Source: Octopus sinensis (lineage: Eukaryota). From it: a DNA stretch of 64,000 nt. The stretch spans positions 27,342,001 to 27,406,000 of the forward strand of contig NC_043000.1 of the NCBI RefSeq assembly GCF_006345805.1, read 5' to 3'. The translations under genes and the position numbers were made by a program. Below the pieces are notes generated by a model. It had not been told where the DNA came from. It ran no database searches and saw only the letters and a list, made by a program, of their open reading frames with translations. Below are positions 5,060 to 60,940 of the stretch, piece by piece; the stretch's first letter is position 1; the number at the start of each line of letters is the position of its first letter.

Positions 5060-5296
5060 TACCTATTTCTTTACTACCCACAAGGGGCTAAACACAGAGA
5101 GGACAAAAAAGGACAGACAAACGGATTAAGTTGATTATATCGACCCCAGTGCGTAACTGGTACTTATTTAATCGACCCCGGAAGGATGAAAGGCAAAGTC
5201 GACCTCGGCGGAATTTGAACTCAGAACGTAACGGCAGACGAAATACTGCTAAGCATTTCGCCCGGCGTGTTAACGTTTCTTCCAGCTCGCCGCCTT
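5060..5296 (-). mobile_element. tRNA-derived SINE-A, full length
   Basis: Head AAGGCGGCGAGCTGG, B-box GAGTTCAAATTCC, central GCCTTTCATCCTTCCGGGGTCGA; homologous to 13226, 25925 and 51787. Confidence 0.85.
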
Positions 5297-10592: not shown

Positions 10593-10825
10593 ATATGTAT
10601 GTATGTGTGTGTGTGCGTGTGTGTATGTTTGTGTGTCTGTGCTTGTCCCGCCAACATCACTTGACAAGTGGTGTGTTTAAGTCCCCGTAACTTAGCGGTT
10701 CGGCAAAAGAGACAGATCGAATAAGTACTAGGCTTACAAAGAATAAGTCCTGGGGTCGATTTGCTCGACTAAAGGTGGTGCTCCAGCATGACCACAGTCA
10801 AATGACTGAAACATGTAAAAGAGTA
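10348..10825 (+). mobile_element. tRNA-derived SINE-B, full length with internal (TA)n(TG)n tract
   Basis: Head GGCGTAGGAGTGGCTGTGTGG, body ...GGAAACTGAAAGAAGCCC, microsatellite, tail ...GCTCCAGCATG..TGACTGAAACA..TAAAAGA; multiple homologs in the window. Confidence 0.85.
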
Positions 10826-13225: not shown

Positions 13226-13640
13226 AGGCGGCGAGCTGGCAGAAACTTTAGCACGCCGGGCGAAGTGCGTAGCCGTATTTCGTCTGTCGTTACGTTCTGA
13301 TTTCAAATTCTGCCGAGGTCGACTTTGCCTTTCATCCTTTCGGGGTCAATAAATGAAGTACCAGTTTCGCACTGGGGTCGATATAATCGACTTAATCCGT
13401 TTGTCTGTTCTTGTTTGTCCTCTGTGTTTAGCCCCTTGTTGGTAGTAAAGAAACGGGTATTTCGTCTGCCGTTACGTTCTGAGTTCAAATTCCGCCGAGA
13501 TCGACTTTGCATTTCATCCTTTCGGGGTCGATTAAATAAGTACCAGTTACGCACTGGAGTCGATGTAATCGACATAATCCGTTTGTTTGTCCTTGTTTGT
13601 CCCGTCTATGTTTAGCCCCTTGCGGGCAATAAAGAAATAA
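13226..13640 (+). mobile_element. SINE-A with tandemly duplicated 182-bp body
   Basis: GTATTTCGTCTG starts at 13275 and 13457; flanked by 21-bp direct repeat TCTTATACAGT(A/T)TAACTAGTA at 13200-13220 and 13641-13661. Confidence 0.85.
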
Positions 13641-15496: not shown

Positions 15497-15758
15497 TTGT
15501 ATATAGATGGATAGGTCAATGGTTAAATACATGCAAACATTTACATATATATATACAGTCATACCTACATACATAAATACACACACACACGCATATATAT
15601 ATATACATACAGGCATTATGTATATATATATATATGTGTGTGTGTATGTGTATGTATGTAGGTATGACCGTATGTATATATATATATATATATGTAAATG
15701 TTTGCATGTATTTAACCATTGACCTATCCATCTATATCCAAATATATATATATATATA
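15481..15758. repeat. Fold-back inverted duplication inside a TA/CA-rich tract
   Basis: ORFs 15507+ and 15516- translate nearly identically; loop caggcat at 15610-15616. Confidence 0.9.
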
Positions 15759-17665: not shown

Positions 17666-17850
17666 GTTTCAAATTTTTGCACAGAGCAACCAATTTCGGA
17701 GAGAGGGGCTGAGTCGATAACATCGACCCCAGTGTCCAATTGGTACTTATGTTATCGACCCCGAAAGGATGAAAGGCAAACTTGGGACGGAAAGTGGATG
17801 AGATGCAGCGAAGCATTTTTCTGGCATGATAACGATTCTTCCAGCTACCC
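17666..17850 (-). mobile_element. SINE-A variant, degenerate
   Basis: Contains tcgaccccgaaaggatgaaaggcaaa central segment. Confidence 0.7.
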
Positions 17851-22042: not shown

Positions 22043-22148
22043 GTACTTGCTTCGAAAGTACATATACTAAAAATTGGAACGATACAGAGAAGAATAACAT
22101 GGCCCCTGCGGGAGAATGACGCGCAAATTCGTGAAGCGTTCCATATTT
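22043..22148 (+). pseudogene. U6: U6 snRNA retropseudogene, full length
   Basis: GTACTTGCTTCG...CATATACTAAAAATTGGAACGATACAGAGAAG...GAAGCGTTCCATATTT; ACAGAGA box at 22084-22090; about 9 differences from canonical U6 as recalled, including catalytic AGC to AAC; no upstream promoter. Confidence 0.95.
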
Positions 22149-22220
22149 CTCTAGCCAGGTGGTGCTAACTTAATACACATGGCCTGGGCCAATACTGGCC
22201 AAAATACTGGCTAAGTTTTA
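22149..22220 (+). mobile_element. CR1 3' tail fused to U6
   Basis: CAGGTGGTGCTA..ACATGGCCTGGGCCAAT..TGGCC.AAA..CTAAGTTTTA matches the CR1 terminus at 42721-42790 (reverse complement). Confidence 0.8.
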
Positions 22221-22234
22221 TATGTATATATATA

Positions 22235-30285: not shown

Positions 30286-32200
30286 CTATGTTTGACTTTT
30301 GCTTTATGTCTGTACAAGTTGGCTCCAAGTCTCACCCAGAGACCTCAAGAGACAACAGGTTTGAAGTTCTGTACCACATATTTGTTTTTTTTTCCTTTCT
30401 TGGTGTACTAGTGAACAATTAAAAAAAAAAAAAGGTCTGTTTTAAACCTTGGGATTACATAGAGAGTATTTTGCGTAGGATATGAGCAGTTCCCATGAGC
30501 ACTATCTTTTGAATTTCTGCCATTTTGGGGTTTCCTGGTATCTGAGTTAGGTAGCAATTAGTCCCTTTCGCTATCACTCCCAGGGCACCTATGACAACAG
30601 GTATTGTTTTAGTCTTCAGGTTCCAGATTTTGCTGATTTCTATTTCAAGATCTTTATATTTGCTCAGTTTTTGGTAGGTCTTGACAGATACGTTTATATC
30701 GATTGGGACAGTCATCTCAATGAGGAGGCATGTTCTTTGTCTGAAGTCTTTCAATATGATGTCTGGCCTATTTGCATCTATCTTCCTGTCAGTTTGAATG
30801 GTGAAGTTCCAGAGGAGTGAGATGTGGTCCTTTTCAAGCGCTGGAGGTGGATTGTGTTCCCACCAGTTTTTTTCATGGGGCAAATCCAGGTTTTTGCAAA
30901 TTACCCAGTGAATATATTGTGCAGCTCTATTATGCCTATTGAGGTACTCTGTAGGCGCTAGAAGACTGCATTTGGAGACAACATGGTCAATGGTTTCATT
31001 TTGTTGTCGGCATACACGACATGTTGGGCTACTGCCGTTCTTTAATATGTTGGCCTGGTAGTTTCTTGTTGGTAGGCATTGATCTTGAGCTGCTATGATA
31101 AACCCCTCTGTTTCAGATTTTAAGCCAGAGGCCATTAGCCATTGATGGGCCAGGGCTTTGTCAATATCTGCATTATTCGCTCTCTTTGGGTATTTGCCAT
31201 AGAGAGGTTTTTCTTGCCATTTATTATTTAGAATATCTAAGGCCGCAGTTTTGGCACGGGTTTTCATGCGCCTAGCTTTTTCTGTGCTTGTTTCTTGTAT
31301 GTCTATCTCTAATTCCGAGATTGGTTGTATTCGGAATTCACTTAGATATTCCTTTGCCTGTTTTGTGACTGAGTATGATGCTTTCTTGTTTTCATGTTTT
31401 GAGACAAGTTTTAACATCCAGTCCTCAGAGTTTTTCAGGTAGGTGTCTAGGCCAATTGTAGCAATCTTCATTGTTATTGCCAGTTGCAAAAGACCACGGC
31501 CTCCCTCTTTTCTTGGCAGATAGAGTCGTTCTGTATCTGCTTAGGGTGGTGCATTCTATGCATTGTCAACAGTTTCCTTATTTTTCTGTCGAGCTGACAT
31601 ATTTCAGTAATTGACCAGTTAACAATATTGAAACTGTAAGTCACGACTGCTATGGCTAATGCATTGATCGCTTCGATCCTGTTTCTTGCATTCAGCTCTG
31701 TCTTGAGTATTGCTCTCACTCTTCGATAGCATTCTCTCCTGATCCTTTCCTTCATCTCTGAATGCCTTATTCCGTTCCCTTCAATTACCCCTAGGTACTT
31801 GTAGCTCTCCGCTGGGTCTAGTTCTTTTATGACATTCTGCTGGTCAAGGTTAACGTTAGATGTTTCTGTTATTTTTCCTTTGATAAAGGTAGTTTTTGCA
31901 CATTTATCGAGGCCGAATTGCATTCTGATGCCGTCACTGAATTGTTTGATTATCGCTAGTAAGCCCTTGAGTTGTTGGTCATTTTTTGCAAAAAGCTTTA
32001 AATCATCAAAGTAAATGAGATGATTTATATTTTTATCAAACATTTTATACCCGTACTGCGCGTCATTGAGCAGCTTTGAGAGAGGTATTAAGGATAAACA
32101 AAAGAGGAGTGGTGACAGTGAGTCACCCTGGAAAATGCCACACGAAATTTTTACATCACCAGCATATAGGGATTCATTGTCACTGTTCAGAGTTAGTGTG
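30286..32200 (-). mobile_element. R4/Dong-clade RLE LINE, young, 5'-truncated
   Basis: RT (GIFQGDSLSP, YFDD, YKYLG), CCHC knuckle CRVCRQQNETIDHVVSKC, RLE RPDIIL..LIEMTVP..KLSKY; frameshift near 31541; (ATT)n on both sides. Confidence 0.95.
30455..31489 (-). CDS. Dong ORF C-terminal part (zinc knuckle + restriction-like endonuclease), pseudogenised
   Basis: 344-aa ORF in the track; continues upstream RT ORF 31474-32043 after a frameshift. Confidence 0.85.
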   Translation of the reverse strand: MQLAITMKIATIGLDTYLKNSEDWMLKLVSKHENKKASYSVTKQAKEYLSEFRIQPISELEIDIQETSTEKARRMKTRAKTAALDILNNKWQEKPLYGKYPKRANNADIDKALAHQWLMASGLKSETEGFIIAAQDQCLPTRNYQANILKNGSSPTCRVCRQQNETIDHVVSKCSLLAPTEYLNRHNRAAQYIHWVICKNLDLPHEKNWWEHNPPPALEKDHISLLWNFTIQTDRKIDANRPDIILKDFRQRTCLLIEMTVPIDINVSVKTYQKLSKYKDLEIEISKIWNLKTKTIPVVIGALGVIAKGTNCYLTQIPGNPKMAEIQKIVLMGTAHILRKILSM

Positions 32201-33751: not shown

Positions 33752-33803
<52 letters not shown>

Positions 33804-33966
33804 TGTGTGTGTCTGTGTATATGCATATAAATATATATACATATACACACAAACTCACACACACACACACACATATATATATATACATACATGTATATAC
33901 ATGTGTGTGCATATATCACTGTTGTATAGAAAAGGTTTCTCTTTGTAAACTAGTGAGGTGGAGGAT

Positions 33967-42574: not shown

Positions 42575-45429
<2,855 letters not shown>

Positions 45430-45607
45430 TTAGCCACTACACACATTTTTCTCTATCCTTCTTTCTCTCCTTGCTTTTTCTGTGTCCCTTTCTGTAGAAG
45501 TGCGTAAGCTCGAAACGTAAAAGACATTCCTGAGCGTTATACTAATACATCTGTTTGTCTTGTACCCCACCTGTCTTTGTCTTTTGTTTTTTTCGTAAAC
45601 TCTCCCT
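45430..45607 (+). mobile_element. Family P2 short element with zero-loop hammerhead motif
   Basis: CTTT-CTGTAGAA-GTGC-GTAA-GCTC-GAAAC-GTA-AAAG at 45488-45523. Confidence 0.65.
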
Positions 45608-47950: not shown

Positions 47951-48044
47951 TTAAATGTGCCGCCATATGAATATGGGTACAGATGAGGTATTTCTTTCAG
48001 AAGTTAGGCCGTTGTCTATCCCAGGATTCTCCAGTTACTGTTAG

Positions 48045-48180
48045 TCTCCAGCAGGTCAACTTTACATTTCATCCTTCCAAGGTCGATAAATTAAGTACAA
48101 GCTGGATACTGGGGTCGATGCAACCGACTTACCTCCTTCCCCAGAATTTCAGGCATTGCGCCTTCATTAGAAAGGATTCG
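48045..48180 (+). mobile_element. SINE-A variant 3' part
   Basis: tttcatccttccaaggtcgataaattaagtac...ggggtcgatg. Confidence 0.65.
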
Positions 48181-48235
48181 GTATTATAGTGGTAAGTATC
48201 CCCGCCTGTCACGCGGGAGACCGGGGTTGGATTCG
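48181..48235 (+). pseudogene. tRNA-Asp-GTC: Truncated (tailless) tRNA-Asp(GTC) retrocopy
   Basis: TATAGTGGTAAGTATCCCCGCCTGTCACGCGGGAGACCGGGGTT matches conserved metazoan tRNA-Asp; acceptor stem absent; GGATTCG repeated at 48174-48180 and 48229-48235. Confidence 0.9.
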
Positions 48236-48299
48236 AAGTAATCGGCTTATCCCTCCTCTAAAGTTTCAGGTGCTCTGGCTAGTGTAGAAATAATAATTA

Positions 48300-48506
48300 T
48301 TATGGAAGGTGATGATCTCGTAGATTCGATAGCTGTATTTCGTCCATTTAAACGAGCTGAGTTCAAATTCTGCCGCGATCCACTTTGCCTTTTATCATTT
48401 TGGGGTCGATGAAATAAGCACCAGTTGCGCTCGGGGAGGGGGTTAATTTGATCGACTGCCCTTTCCTACCTAATTTCAGGCCTTGCGCCAACAATAGAAA
48501 TTATTG

Positions 48507-48510
<4 letters not shown>
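48300..48510 (+). mobile_element. SINE-A variant, degenerate
   Basis: ctgagttcaaattctgccg...ttttggggtcgatgaaataagcaccag. Confidence 0.65.
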
Positions 48511-48553
<43 letters not shown>

Positions 48554-49554: not shown

Positions 49555-49910
49555 GTATATTATATATGTATGCATATATATATATATATACATGTATATA
49601 TATACACACACACATATATATGTATGTGTACATATATATAATTACATATATATATGCGTGTGTGTGTCTGTGTGTGTGTGTGTGTGTGCATGCACACATA
49701 TATACGCCTGTGCTGGTTCCATTTTGTGTTTATATGTAAGTCCTCTATAAGTGCTTCGTCAGTATACGTTCAAATGCTAGAATTTCGTTCCATCTTAAAC
49801 TCTGAAACTTTTCTCGTCTCTCTTTCTCTTTCTCTTTCTATCTCATGTATTTCCCTACACATGCATAGATGCATGCATACCTGTGTGTGTAACATTTGTA
49901 TATATATATA

Positions 49911-54234: not shown

Positions 54235-54297
54235 GTAATTGAACCGCCCACCGGTTCGACGCATCAGCGGATTCCGGACGACCGCCCCCTATTCGAA

Positions 54298-54940
54298 GCC
54301 AGCTGGGGCAATAAGTCTACACTGGCTAGTAAGTCGGCTTTACAATATCAAAACTGCCGACAAGTGGTATAATCACCACCCTGACGCTGTAACTGAAGGA
54401 GAAAATGTAACCATTCTGTGGGACTTTCCAGTACATACAGACCGAACCGTCAAGGCCAATAAACCAGATGTTGTGAAAGACCAAAACAATAAAGTTTGCT
54501 TATTGATCGACATGAGCATCCCTGTGATCATAATATCTCAGCGAAAGAGTTTGACAAGCTCAGAAAATATAAAGACCTACTCATTGAAATTGAGAAAATG
54601 TGGCATCTCAAGGCGGTTACAATACCAGTGATCGTAGGAGCACTAGGAATGATCAAGAAGGGAACCGAAAATTATATGAGAATGATCCCTGGCTTACCAT
54701 CCCTGCAAGAAGTGCAAAAGATTGTCTTCACTGGTACATCACACGTATTGAGAAGAGCATTGTCGATGTGAGAACTGTTGCTGCTCATGTATTTTAATTT
54801 AACTTTAAAAAAAAAAAATGAACGAACTATTGAGTTTGGTTTAATGGCCTACCAATATATACTATGAGTTTCTTTGCCCTAGGAGTCGGGAAGACACTCG
54901 GCAAGAAATGGAAGCAAATTTGAAAGAAGGAAAAAAAATA
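54298..54940 (+). mobile_element. Dong LINE 3' fragment (RLE domain)
   Basis: ILWDFPVHTDRTVKANKPD, KYKDLLIEIEKMW, PVIVGALG; (AAT)n/(AAG)n tail. Confidence 0.9.
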
Positions 54941-57204: not shown

Positions 57205-58324
57205 AGGGAAAAAAGTGAAGAAACAAATGAACCAAAAAACTATAGCCCATAACCTGCTTAACAACTATGTACAAAACACTAACATCTGTCCTGACGGAAT
57301 ATACCTATAGTTTTTTAACAGGCAGCAGCATATTCCCTAATGAACAGAAAGGATGTAAACGTGGATCCTACGGCTGTAAAGACCAACTACTCATCAATAA
57401 GATGATCTTAGAAGATTGTCACAAACGACACAAAAACTTATCAATAGCCTGGATAGACTATAAAAAGGCTTTTGATAGCCTACCACATAGCTGGATTAGG
57501 AAATGCCTGGAAATGTATAAGATAGCACCTACTCTGCGAAACTTCTTGACTGTAAGTATGAGATCATGGAGAACCACACTAACTCTGAACAGTGACAATG
57601 AATCCCTAAATGCTGGTGATGTAAAAATTTCGTGTGGCATTTTCCAGGGTGACTCACTGTCACCACTCCTCTTTTGTTTATCCTTAATACCTCTCTCAAA
57701 GCTCTCAATGACGCGCAGTACGGGTATAAAATGTTTGATAAAAATATAAATCATCTCGTTTACATGGATGATTTAAAGCTTTTTGCAAAAAATGACGAAC
57801 AACTCAAGGGCTTACTAGCGATAGTCAAACAATTCAGTGACGACATCAGAATGCAATTCGGCCTCGATAAATGTGCAAAGGCTACCTTTATCAAAGGAAA
57901 AATGACAGAAACATCTAACGTTAACCTTGACCAACAGAATGTCATAAAAGAACTAGACCCAGCGGAGAGCTACAAGTACCTAGGGGTAATTGAAGGGAAC
58001 GGAATAAGGCATTCAGAGATGAAGGAAAGGATCAGGAGAGAATGCTATCGATGATTGCATTCAAAAGATAGTGCTCATGGGAACTGCTCATATCCTACGC
58101 AAAATACTCTCTATGTAATCCCAAGGTTAAAAAAAAACTTATTTATTTATTTATTTATTATTTTTTTTTATGTATTAGACATTCACTAGTACAACACCAA
58201 AAAAAAAAAGAAAGGAAAATAAAAACAAATATATGGCACAGAACTTCCAACCTGTTGTCTCTTGAGGTCTCTGGGTGAGACTTGGAGCCAACTTGTACAG
58301 ACATAAAGCAAAAGTCAAACATAG
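57205..58324 (+). mobile_element. Dong LINE (same subfamily as 30286), 5'-truncated and internally deleted
   Basis: TNEPKNY.PITCL, AWIDYKKAFDSLPHSW, YMDD; RT joined at ECYR to the last ~20 codons; 3' UTR near-identical to 30286-30450. Confidence 0.95.
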
Positions 58325-58768: not shown

Positions 58769-58889
<121 letters not shown>

Positions 58890-58892
58890 AGA

Positions 58893-59223
58893 AGGCGCAT
58901 GGCTCAGTGGTTAGAGCGTCGAGCTTACCATCGTGAGGTTGTGAGCTCGAATCCCGGACCGGGCTGCGTGTTGTGTTCTCGAGCAAGGCACTTTATTTCA
59001 CGTTGCTCCAGTTCACTCAGCTGTAGAAATGAGTTGCGACGTCACTGGTGCCAAGCTGTATCGACCTTGGATAACACTGGTGGCGTAGAGAGGGGAGGCT
59101 GGTATGCATGGGCGACTGCTGGCCTTCCATAAAAAACAACCTTGCCCGGACTTGTGTCTAGGAGGGTAACTTTCTAAGTGCAATCCCATGGTCATTCATG
59201 ACCGAAGGGGGTCTTTACCTTAC

Positions 59224-59682: not shown

Positions 59683-60940
59683 TATTGGGTTGGCAACTAA
59701 GTTCCCACCGTTTTTTAAAATTTGAATTTTTGAAAAAGCCCCATTAAAAAAGAACAACTAATTAATCAATAATGTATTCATTCTTGTTGTTTACAACTTC
59801 TCAAAGTTCATCACGATTTTCAATACCTCATTGGTAGAAATCACCCGATTGCGACTTGAAAAATTGATCCATCCAAGCTCTCAATTCTACATCAGTATTG
59901 AACCAAACTCCGCGCATAGAATTTGAAAGAGATCTATGGAGGTGGAAATCCGTTGGTGCCAAACCAAGAGAGTGTGATGGGTGTGTCAGCACTTCCCAGC
60001 CATACGTTTGAATGACTTCCTAGGTCATATTGGCGATATGGGGGCGGACGTTGCCGAGCAACAGAAGAACTCCATGCTGCCGATTAGGTCTTTTCTCTTG
60101 AATAGCCGTGTTGATTCGTTCCATCTGTTGAACATAGAGTTCCGCCTTGACCGTTTGGTTCCGTTTAAGCAATTCGTAATGGATAATCCCTTCCCAGTCC
60201 CACTATACGCACAACATCGTTTTACGTGGATGACTGTATTGTTTCACGCGCGGTGTCGCTTGTTTACCGGGGTTAAGCAATTCCTTACGCTGTTTCATAC
60301 TATTCGGTAAAGAAATCGTTGTTTGTAACCATGAGTTGAGCAGTGACGAGCAAGCAAACCAGCGGATATTGTGACACGTTGATTTTTGTCGTAATCACTT
60401 AAAGCATGCGGAATCCATGCTCCATACTTCTGAACCTTTCCCATCGAGTGACGATGCTCCTCTATAGTGGTGTGGGGGCATTCAATTTTCATTCCATTTC
60501 CCTTGTCGTTTGACGAGATTTTCGTGCAAATTTGGTTCAATCGCTCTGCATCGAACTCAACTGGACGACCAGAACGAGGTGCTTTTTTGAGGTCAAAATT
60601 TCGATTTTTGAACTTGGAATACGAATCACGAGCAGTTATTTCAGCTATTGCATACACAGCACAAATATCGCGAATAGATTTTGCGGCCTTAGAACCTTGA
60701 TAAAAAAGCAAAAAGAAGGAGGCGTCGAAAATGCTCATTTTTTCTTAATTTGACATTCCATTTTAAGGATCTGAAAATAAACAAAAATTTACTAAAATTA
60801 ACTAGAAAAAAAGCAACAAAATAGATTCGAAAATGATTCAAAAATAGAATTTGCGGAAAAAATAGATTCAAAATTTTTTAAAATGCAATAAATTCCAAAA
60901 TCAAGAATAAAATAGCGGGAACTTAGTTGTCAACCCAATA
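59683..60940 (-). mobile_element. Mariner transposon, full length, degenerate
   Basis: TIRs TATTGGGTTGGCAACTAAGTTCCC / GGGAACTTAGTTGTCAACCCAATA; transposase PRSGRP and WIPHAL motifs; frameshifted. Confidence 0.9.

What the first reader, a model, noticed from the sequence alone, without database searches (positions are those of the whole stretch)
48174..48235. Tailless tRNA-Asp retrocopy primed at the T-loop
Seen: ~45 nt of pristine tRNA-Asp(GUC) with no acceptor stem and no A-tail, flanked by a 7-bp repeat GGATTCG. The downstream copy overlaps the T-loop and explains the single mismatch (TTGGATTC for TTCGATTC). Established: tailless retropseudogenes primed by target microhomology were described as a mammalian L1 product (Schmitz and colleagues). 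Inference: the same mechanism operates with a non-L1 LINE in a mollusc.
Basis: partly seen in the sequence, partly recalled or inferred. Interest (0 to 1): 0.75.

Follow-up and report, generated by a model that had tools for sequence, protein, structure and literature searches.

The report
Partial tRNA-Asp retrocopy nested between SINEs
A 48-base, almost perfect piece of tRNA-Asp sits between two copies of GGATTCG at the junction of two old SINE elements in what is probably a cephalopod genome. It is most likely a reverse-transcribed tRNA fragment primed by a 5-base match to the T-loop, but this single locus cannot prove that mechanism.

Summary
Window 48185-48228 (44 nt) is identical to at least 129 real tRNA-Asp(GUC) genes. 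Window 48178-48234 equals tRNA positions 4-61 at 55/57. GGATTCG flanks the piece at 48174-48180 and 48229-48235. There is no 3' acceptor strand, no T-stem 3' strand and no A-tail.

The piece lies inside a head-to-tail cluster of three SINE units. The left heptamer directly follows the tail of SINE unit A. The right heptamer is the first 7 nt of a 5'-truncated, degenerate SINE 3' module (B'), where 14 paralogous SINE cores read GGGGTCG once.

Main rival (about 0.27): one event that fused the tRNA piece to the SINE 3' module. A U6/LINE-tail chimera at 22043-22222 in the same window shows such fusions occur here.

A SINE-family head (about 0.1) could not be tested, because no tool gave access to cephalopod genomic DNA from a close relative. 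"Non-L1 LINE" and "mollusc" are plausible but not shown.

Verdict: a new member of a known kind, of moderate interest.

The parts
47985..48173 (+). SINE unit A: a diverged tRNA-derived SINE whose 3' module ends ...TTTCAGGCATTGCGCCTTCATTAGAAA at 48173, with no microsatellite tail left. The 5' boundary is approximate.
   Evidence: Alignment with other SINE copies of the window. The tail motif is shared with unit C.
48174..48180 (+). Left GGATTCG: the putative 5' copy of the target-site duplication. Its last 3 nt (TCG) equal tRNA-Asp positions 4-6, giving microhomology at the 5' junction.
48181..48228 (+). tRNA-Asp(GUC) positions 7-55: D-arm, anticodon arm, variable loop and the 5' strand of the T-stem up to T55. 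There is 1 mismatch (G10->T at 48184). Positions 48185-48228 are identical to real genes.
48229..48235 (+). Right GGATTCG. It is both the first 7 nt of SINE module B' (homologous to GGGGTCG of the SINE core) and the putative primer or 3' duplication copy. Its GATTC equals T-loop positions 57-61. Its first G accounts for the C56->G mismatch.
48236..48290 (+). The rest of the 5'-truncated SINE 3' module B' (AAGTAATCGGCTTATCC...GTTTCAGGTGCTCTGGCTAGTGTAGAAA). It is degenerate at near-invariant core positions.
   Evidence: 64-71% colinear identity to modules A, C and the 17730 copy, with z = 8.1 and 7.1 against shuffles for A and 17730 and z = 3.9 for C. Core alignment A2.
48291..48303 (+). TAATAATTATTAT microsatellite-like tail of B', or the remainder of A's tail.
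48304..48550 (+). SINE unit C (head, body, tail ...CAACAATAGAAA) plus an (ATT)n tail. It is flanked by ATT repeats on both sides, so it inserted into the preceding tail.

Best explanation
An RNA-derived partial copy of tRNA-Asp(GUC) was inserted later into an older, already degenerate SINE cluster by target-primed reverse transcription without a tail.

Inferred steps:
1. A LINE endonuclease nicked the bottom strand between the end of SINE unit A (...TAGAAA) and the first base of the truncated SINE module B' (GGATTCG...).
2. The freed 3' end (5'-CGAATCC-3') annealed by 5 bp to GAUUC in the T-loop/T-stem (positions 57-61) of a tRNA-Asp molecule. That molecule was probably hypomodified or a nuclear precursor, because m1A58 would disturb this pairing.
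3. Reverse transcription ran from position 55 towards the 5' end.
4. The top strand was cut 7 nt downstream. Its end (...GGATTCG-3') paired through TCG with the cDNA of positions 4-6 and primed second-strand synthesis.

The result is GGATTCG - tRNA positions 7-55 - GGATTCG, with the target's G in place of C56.

Shown: the tRNA identity, the two heptamers, the microhomology at both junctions, and the SINE nature and degeneracy of the flanks.
Inferred: the RNA intermediate, the order of events, and the enzyme.
For: (1) 44/44 identity to real tRNA-Asp genes and 55/57 over positions 4-61.
(2) A perfect 7-nt direct repeat lies exactly where tRNA homology ends on both sides. Its chance is at most about 2% even with generous windows.
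(3) Paralogous empty sites: joining the flanks gives ...TAGAAA|GGATTCG|AAGTAATCGGCTTA. This is colinear without a gap with 14 other SINE cores in the window, which read GGGGTCG|AT..AATCGACT once and carry no insert.
(4) Age contrast: B' departs from conserved core positions at 4/17 sites, including 3 of the 6 near-invariant columns. The tRNA piece plus both heptamers shows 1 change in 62 (Fisher p = 0.007). The two heptamers share the derived A and T, so B' had already diverged when the duplication arose.
(5) One of the two mismatches (C56) is explained by a target-derived primer; the other (G10) lies 3 nt from the 5' junction and is unexplained.
(6) Truncation in a loop, target complementarity of 2-18 nt and absence of a tail are the published hallmarks of tailless retropseudogenes (PMC5322556).
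(7) LINEs with endonuclease and reverse-transcriptase domains are present, one only 2.7 kb away.
Against: - The left edge of the duplication falls exactly on the A|B' junction, which an independent insertion would hit in roughly 1% of cases. A single event that brought the tRNA and B' together explains this for free.
- The tRNA piece has the same orientation as the SINEs.
- Seven bp is short compared with the 17-20 bp duplications of type-1 SINEs here, and is below Noll et al.'s 8-nt cut-off.
- The priming model requires extension from a terminal C:C mismatch.
- No second example was found in the window.
- No orthologous empty site or genome-wide copy count could be obtained.
- LINEs that share tails with SINEs are usually of the 'stringent' type, which needs its own 3' tail. 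Such enzymes are not known to make tailless copies (PMC5322556).
Confidence: 0.5

Rival explanations
1. Single-event chimera. A tRNA-Asp fragment and the 3' module of a SINE RNA were joined in one retrotransposition. The join came either from reverse-transcriptase template switching at the T-loop/SINE-core microhomology, or from RNA ligation of a cleaved tRNA to a cleaved SINE RNA. The product was integrated through the SINE tail into the microsatellite tail of unit A. The left GGATTCG would then be either chance or the trace of a second jump back onto the 5' end of the SINE RNA via the UCG microhomology.
For: - B' starts exactly where the tRNA ends, and the block starts exactly where unit A ends, so one insertion suffices.
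- The tRNA piece and B' have the same orientation.
- The same window holds a U6 snRNA copy fused directly to about 70 nt of the 3' tail of the local LINE, inside a (TA)n tract.
- A SINE dimer is enclosed by one duplication of about 20 bp.
- Unit C inserted into a tail microsatellite.
- Published precedents: double template jumps (PMC2104539, seen as title and abstract), RtcB ligation of U6 to L1 RNA (PMC6789731), and tRNA/L1 chimeras in primates (bioRxiv 10.1101/2025.02.02.635956).
Against: - The left heptamer needs chance (about 0.2-2%) or an extra, ad hoc jump.
- No duplication flanks the composite block.
- B' is degenerate at near-invariant core positions, and its conserved inverted repeat GTCGA/TCGAC is broken. 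The tRNA part is pristine, which is unexpected if both are the same age and B' had to be a recognisable template.
- In primate tRNA/L1 chimeras the tRNA is mostly a 5' half and antisense, unlike here.
Confidence: 0.27
2. Head of a SINE family. The unit 48174-48303 (tRNA-Asp-like head, short body, LINE-type tail, TAA repeat) is one copy of a multicopy tRNA-Asp-derived SINE.
For: - The layout of head, body, tail and microsatellite is that of a SINE.
- SINEs are dense here, with 14 cores in 64 kb.
- New SINEs are thought to arise from exactly such fusions (PMC4494074).
- Genome-wide copy number could not be checked.
Against: - It is single-copy in the window.
- The head lacks tRNA positions 1-3.
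- The head carries changes at conserved promoter positions G10 (A box) and C56/C62 (B box). The consensus positions come from my own knowledge.
- A head identical to the tRNA next to a degenerate tail is not what same-age copies show.
- The left heptamer is unexplained.
- None of the papers retrieved by the searches names a tRNA-Asp-headed cephalopod SINE.
- The absence of the junction in bacterial, viral and metagenome collections is uninformative, because those collections hold no DNA carrying the window's SINE families.
Confidence: 0.1
3. Endonuclease-independent capture. A tRNA-Asp cDNA or RNA fragment was used as filler during microhomology-mediated repair of a break at the A|B' junction, possibly the unresolved 5' end of the B' integration itself.
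For: Microhomology at both junctions (3 nt and 5 nt) is typical of alternative end joining. The site is a former integration junction.
Against: A clean 7-bp duplication points to staggered nicks rather than a simple break. Endonuclease-independent LINE insertions usually lack duplications (own knowledge). The sequence cannot separate this reading from target-primed reverse transcription.
Confidence: 0.08
4. Remnant of a genuine tRNA-Asp gene whose two ends were destroyed at the DNA level by SINE insertions or deletions.
For: The core is identical to functional genes.
Against: - Both ends are replaced exactly at identical heptamers.
- There is no 3' half, no T-run terminator and no gene-like 5' flank (compared).
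- The decay is not uniform: 47/48 in the middle against complete loss at the ends.
- ARAGORN finds nothing and Rfam is below threshold.
Confidence: 0.05

Closest known systems
Tailless retropseudogenes of therian mammals (Schmitz et al. 2004; Noll et al. 2015, PMC5322556)
   Same: A sense copy of a small RNA that is 3'-truncated in a loop, has no oligo(A), is flanked by direct repeats, and has a target complementary to the last nucleotides copied (5 nt here; 2-18 nt published).
   Different: - The repeat is 7 bp, below their 8-35 nt.
- The target is ...GAAA|GGATTCG, not TT/WAAAA.
- The priming site is not A-rich.
- The host is probably a cephalopod, in which RTE elements are the LINEs reported as active or expressed.
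- Noll et al. found such copies only in therians and the anole lizard (plus a few in maize) and tied them to 'relaxed' L1.
- Here there is one locus, not a class.
U6/L1-type chimeric retrocopies and tRNA/L1 chimeras (Buzdin 2002, cited in PMC4494074; PMC6789731; bioRxiv 10.1101/2025.02.02.635956)
   Same: A small Pol III RNA lies 5' of a truncated retroelement 3' end in the same orientation. The same window contains a clear U6/LINE-tail example.
   Different: - Those chimeras are enclosed as a whole by one duplication, and the small RNA is not itself bracketed by a repeat.
- Primate tRNA/L1 chimeras mostly hold antisense 5' halves.
- Here the partner is a degenerate SINE module rather than a LINE.
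tRNA-derived SINEs, including the SINE families of this window
   Same: A tRNA-like 5' part followed by a conserved body motif and a LINE-type tail with a microsatellite.
   Different: It is single-copy in the window. The 5' end and promoter boxes are damaged. The head is identical to the present-day tRNA while the tail is decayed.

Membership tests
Tailless retropseudogene (Schmitz/Noll) | Sense copy of a cellular small RNA, 3'-truncated by at least 10 nt | tested here: met
   tRNA-Asp positions 4/7-55/61 are present. Positions 62-73 and CCA are absent.
Tailless retropseudogene (Schmitz/Noll) | No oligo(A) tail at the 3' end of the copy | tested here: met
   The copy is followed by GGATTCGAAGTAATCGG.
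Tailless retropseudogene (Schmitz/Noll) | Flanking target-site duplication (8-35 nt, at least 70% identity in their screen) | tested here: inconclusive
   The repeat is a perfect 7 nt, one short of their cut-off. Its chance is at most about 2%. Its left edge coincides with a SINE/SINE junction.
Tailless retropseudogene (Schmitz/Noll) | Truncation point in a single-stranded region, with the target complementary to the terminal 2-18 nt of the RNA | tested here: met
   The end lies in the T-loop. GATTC of the right heptamer equals positions 57-61.
Tailless retropseudogene (Schmitz/Noll) | 5' end (almost) complete, with at most 5 nt missing | tested here: met
   Homology starts at position 4. Positions 1-3 do not match.
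Tailless retropseudogene (Schmitz/Noll) | L1-type target TT/WAAAA and dependence on L1 | tested here: not met
   The site reads GAAA|GGATTCG. The responsible LINE cannot be identified. The LINE clades of the window were not assigned.
Tailless retropseudogene (Schmitz/Noll) | Empty site in relatives (presence/absence) | not testable with these tools
   No genomic DNA of this or a closely related species was reachable. Only paralogous SINE cores served as surrogate empty sites.
Small-RNA/LINE-or-SINE chimeric retrocopy | Small RNA directly fused 5' of a truncated retroelement 3' end, same orientation, with the element's own tail | tested here: met
   The tRNA piece abuts B', which ends in TAGAAA plus a TAA repeat.
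Small-RNA/LINE-or-SINE chimeric retrocopy | One duplication enclosing the whole chimera | tested here: inconclusive
   No shared k-mer of 7 nt or more lies upstream of unit A and downstream of B' or C. The block lies in microsatellite tails, where duplications cannot be read.
SINE family | Many dispersed copies with the same head-tail junction | not testable with these tools
   There is one copy in 64 kb. The source genome is not available.
SINE family | Intact internal Pol III promoter (A and B boxes) | tested here: not met
   G10->T lies in the A box; C56->G and C62->G lie in the B box. The box consensus is from my own knowledge.
Functional tRNA gene | Complete cloverleaf that passes tRNA detectors | tested here: not met
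   ARAGORN finds 0 genes. Rfam tRNA scores 18.9 bits against a 29-bit threshold, with the T-arm deleted.

The most novel reading that the evidence does not exclude
The LINE machinery of cephalopods (RTE or another non-L1 clade that shares tails with SINEs) can start reverse transcription on an untailed cellular RNA with only about 5 nt of target microhomology. Tailless retroposition would then not be a speciality of 'relaxed' L1 elements of amniotes. Together with the U6/LINE-tail chimera, this would mean that small Pol III RNAs are routinely drawn into retrotransposition in these genomes.
Probability: 0.25. Interest if true: 0.55.

Novelty: new member of a known kind. Interest (0 to 1): 0.35.

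Why it matters
Noll et al. (PMC5322556) concluded that tailless retropseudogenes track the 'relaxed' L1 lineage of therians and lizards and are absent where L1 is not active.

A genuine tailless tRNA retrocopy in a cephalopod would argue otherwise. RTE elements are the LINEs reported as active or expressed in octopus genomes. Microhomology-primed initiation on arbitrary RNAs would then be a more general property of LINE reverse transcriptases.

It would also add a source of tRNA-like sequence, and of possible new SINE heads, in genomes that are about half repeats.

On its own, one 48-nt fragment is an anecdote. Its value is as a search image for a genome-wide census.

Tried and rejected
(1) I looked for the junk reading frames that span the fragment (32 aa, 68 aa) and the neighbouring 772-aa LINE frame in the contig index. 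None is on record.

(2) I searched the 5.8-billion-protein collection with the translated tRNA/B' junction to find other copies. No candidate came back.

(3) An exact-pattern scan for the junction GCGGGAGACCGGGGTTGGATTCG in bacterial/archaeal genomes and viral contigs gave 0 hits. A scan for the abundant SINE of the window also gave 0. These collections therefore show no DNA carrying the window's SINE families, and the zeros say nothing about copy number.

(4) The metagenome scan for the 44-nt core returned only ordinary tRNA-Asp genes. None of those 120 loci carries the window's SINEs.

(5) The Rfam scan at permissive E-value over the whole window was swamped by microsatellite 'miRNA' hits and was useless for finding further small-RNA fragments. 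I replaced it with a BLAST of 177 eukaryotic tRNAs, which found only this locus plus a weak SINE head.

(6) A 22-kb Argonauta hians locus, fetched through the best named LINE homologue, shares only the LINE tail and the type-2 SINE tail. It has no type-1 or type-3 SINE and no tRNA-Asp/B' unit, so it is too distant to help.

(7) A search for a duplication enclosing A+tRNA+B' or A..C found nothing except ATT repeats around C.

(8) Misincorporation at modified bases: the only strong reverse-transcriptase block expected in tRNA-Asp, m1A58 (own knowledge), lies in the primer-annealed part. G10->T cannot be assigned to a modification. This test is uninformative.

(9) The conserved inverted repeat GTCGA/TCGAC in the SINE cores pairs in 93% of cells but shows no covariation. 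It is used only as a marker of B' decay.

Full report
**1. What is there**

The window reads ...CATTAGAAA|GGATTCG|GTATTATAGTGGTAAGTATCCCCGCCTGTCACGCGGGAGACCGGGGTT|GGATTCG|AAGTAATCGGCTTATCC... The heptamers lie at 48174-48180 and 48229-48235.

- An exact-match scan of metagenome contigs with the 44 nt at 48185-48228 returned 120 loci with 129 matches. Almost all are ordinary tRNA-Asp(GTC) genes of the form TCCTCG(A/G/T)TAG + core + C(G/A)ATTCCCCG(N)CGGGGAG + T-run. None reads GGGGTTGGATTCG.
- Against the genes with G at position 7, BLAST aligns window 48178-48234 with tRNA positions 4-61 at 55/57. The mismatches are G10->T (48184) and C56->G (48229).
- ARAGORN finds no tRNA in the window. Rfam's tRNA model scores 18.9 bits against a 29-bit cut-off, recognising the D-arm and a GUC anticodon arm but no T-arm.
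- The fragment is single-copy in the window. A library of 177 eukaryotic tRNAs hits nothing else of note.

One correction applies: positions 4-7 of the 5' acceptor strand are present.

**2.

Both flanks are SINEs. The window holds at least 14 copies of a conserved SINE body motif, GGGGTCGAT..(A)TCGACT. They belong to families with three kinds of tail.

- Unit A (about 47985-48173) ends ...TTTCAGGCATTGCGCCTTCATTAGAAA at 48173.
- Unit C (48304-48500 plus (ATT)n) has the same kind of tail. It is flanked by ATT repeats on both sides, so it inserted into a tail microsatellite.
- B' is the stretch after the tRNA piece: GGATTCGAAGTAATCGGCTTATCC...GTTTCAGGTGCTCTGGCTAGTGTAGAAA + TAATAATTATTAT (48229-48303). 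It is colinear with the 3' modules of unit A (65% identity, z = 8.1 against shuffles), of the copy at 17730 (71%, z = 7.1) and of unit C (64%, z = 3.9).

The right heptamer is therefore the first seven bases of a 5'-truncated SINE module, homologous to GGGGTCG. The left heptamer directly follows the last base of unit A.

**3. Surrogate empty site**

Joining the flanks and keeping one heptamer gives ...TAGAAA|GGATTCG|AAGTAATCGGCTTA. This aligns without a gap to all 14 paralogous cores, each of which has the heptamer position once and no insert.

B' is degenerate:
- It is the deviant sequence in 3 of the 6 near-invariant core columns.
- It differs at 4 of 17 conserved positions, against 1 change in 62 positions for the tRNA piece plus both heptamers (Fisher p = 0.007).
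- Both heptamers share the derived A and T. B' had therefore already diverged from the consensus when the repeat arose, and little has changed since.

**4. Significance of the repeat**

With 20- and 22-nt windows around the two homology ends, and the tRNA-matching bases held fixed, a shared 7-mer appears in 1.6% of simulations. It appears in 2.0% of comparable non-repetitive positions in the window. For a repeat placed exactly at the ends of homology, my own estimate, not simulated, is a lower figure of 0.1-0.5%. The repeat is real evidence but not overwhelming.

**5. Best mechanism (confidence about 0.5)**

The proposed mechanism is tailless target-primed reverse transcription.

1. The bottom strand is nicked between A's TAGAAA and B'.
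2. The primer 5'-CGAATCC-3' pairs with GAUUC at positions 57-61, leaving its terminal C opposite C56.
3. cDNA synthesis runs from position 55 towards the 5' end.
4. The top strand is nicked 7 nt downstream.
5. Second-strand priming uses the TCG microhomology with positions 4-6.

This accounts for every base, for the C56->G mismatch and for the youth of the tRNA piece relative to B'. It also matches the published hallmarks of tailless retropseudogenes: truncation in loops, complementarity of the target to the terminal 2-18 nt, and no tail (PMC5322556).

From my own knowledge, m1A58 blocks reverse transcriptases and Watson-Crick pairing. The template was therefore probably a hypomodified or precursor tRNA, as Schmitz et al. 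noted for some of their cases (quoted in PMC5322556).

**6. Weak points**

- The left edge of the duplication coincides to the base with the A|B' junction. I estimate a random independent insertion would do this about 1% of the time.
- The tRNA piece and the SINEs share orientation.
- The repeat is short compared with the 17-20 bp duplications of type-1 SINEs in the window.
- The target does not look like an L1 site.
- LINEs that share tails with SINEs are usually of the stringent type, which needs its own 3' tail.

**7. Main rival (about 0.27)**

The rival is one event that fused the tRNA fragment to the SINE 3' module, by template switching or by RNA ligation, and integrated the product through the SINE tail into A's tail.

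Support from the same window is direct.
- The Rfam U6 hit (22043-22150, 87 bits) is not a plain gene. Its 3' end runs straight into about 70 nt that align with the 3' tail of the LINE at 42730-45446(-), followed by (TA)n. It also has (TA)n upstream.
- A SINE dimer at 13227-~13640 is enclosed by a single duplication of about 20 bp.

Published precedents exist: double template jumps (PMC2104539), RtcB ligation of U6 to L1 RNA (PMC6789731) and tRNA/L1 chimeras (bioRxiv 10.1101/2025.02.02.635956).

This rival explains the junction coincidence. It leaves the left heptamer to chance or to an extra jump. It also requires a degenerate SINE RNA, with its conserved inverted repeat already weakened, as the template.

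**8. Other rivals**

- A tRNA-Asp-headed SINE family (about 0.1). It is untestable here. The damaged A and B boxes, the missing positions 1-3 and the head/tail age contrast argue against it.
- Filler capture during end joining (about 0.08).
- A decayed genuine gene (about 0.05).

**9. Host and enzyme**

The 772-aa frame at 43128-45446(-) carries endonuclease and reverse-transcriptase domains. Its best named homologue is from the octopod Argonauta hians at 53% identity. A 22-kb Argonauta locus shares the LINE tail and the type-2 SINE tail but none of the other elements.

A cephalopod origin is therefore plausible, not proven. An RTE and a Dong element were the two intact full-length LINEs found in the O. 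bimaculoides repeat library, and RTE elements show recent activity or expression in O. bimaculoides and O. vulgaris (PMC9115989). 'Non-L1' is thus reasonable. However, the clade of the window's LINEs and the owner of the ...TAGAAA(TAA)n tail were not determined.

**10. What could not be done**

No collection at hand holds genomic DNA of this or a closely related species.

**11. Verdict**

- The locus is best filed as a probable tailless, microhomology-primed tRNA-Asp retrocopy nested in old SINEs, with a single-event tRNA/SINE chimera as a serious alternative.
- It is a new member of a known kind and of moderate interest.
- The U6/LINE-tail chimera found in passing is at least as clear an example of small-RNA capture by this genome's LINE machinery.

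Noticed in passing
window 22043-22222 (+): U6 snRNA copy (Rfam 87 bits, model 1-105) fused at its 3' end to about 70 nt that align with the 3' tail of the LINE at 42730-45446(-). It is followed and preceded by (TA)n, and no U6 promoter elements are visible upstream. It is either a U6/LINE-tail chimeric retrocopy like the mammalian U6/L1 chimeras, or a U6-headed SINE.
   Followed up: partly
window 42730-45446 (-): LINE with a 772-aa open frame (endonuclease plus reverse transcriptase, N-terminally truncated). Its tail is ...AGGTGGTGCT..CATGGCCTGG..GTCGAAAC..AAGTTTTA(TA)n. The type-2 SINE copies at 10752, 18950, 55305 and 56680 carry a related tail. The best named homologue is from Argonauta hians at 53% identity.
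   Followed up: partly
window 13227-~13640 (+): SINE dimer (one full unit plus a 5'-truncated unit) enclosed by one target-site duplication of about 20 bp, CTTATACAGT(A/T)TAACTAGTA. It was therefore made in one event, presumably by template switching. The copy at 5294-~5070 (-) has a duplication of about 17 bp.
   Followed up: partly
window: 14 sites, e.g. 5129-5147, 13374-13392, 48111-48129: All SINE families of the window share the body motif GGGGTCGAT..(A)TCGACT, which contains a conserved 5-6-bp inverted repeat (GTCGA/TCGAC). It pairs in 93% of cells but shows no covariation. It may be a hairpin recognised by the reverse transcriptase.
   Followed up: partly
window 58850-59150 (+): Another tRNA-like SINE head (a weak tRNA-Ile-like 25-nt match at 58902-58925). 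The overlapping reading frame translates to ...MAQWLERRAY..VVSSNPGPG, typical of a tRNA-derived head.
   Followed up: no
window 30455-32043 (-), 57267-58054 (+), 54239-54631 (+), 60295-60738 (-): Further transposon reading frames: two related reverse-transcriptase fragments (one with a zf-RVT domain) and a mariner-type HTH_48 fragment.
   Followed up: no
window, many sites (e.g. 15553-15673, 33766-33892, 49567-49637): Long (TA)n/(CA)n-type microsatellites give about 200 sub-threshold 'miRNA' hits (mir-297, mir-466, mir-3149...) in a permissive Rfam scan. These are composition artefacts.
   Followed up: no
loci L009, L095, L100, L101 (metagenome contigs): In these contigs the tRNA-Asp core has a non-gene 5' flank and is followed by ...GGGGAGCCATTTGTAGTA...GGGGGTTCAAGT. 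This suggests a tRNA-Asp-derived repeat or tandem tRNA-like array in some unidentified marine eukaryote, unrelated to the window's SINEs.
   Followed up: no
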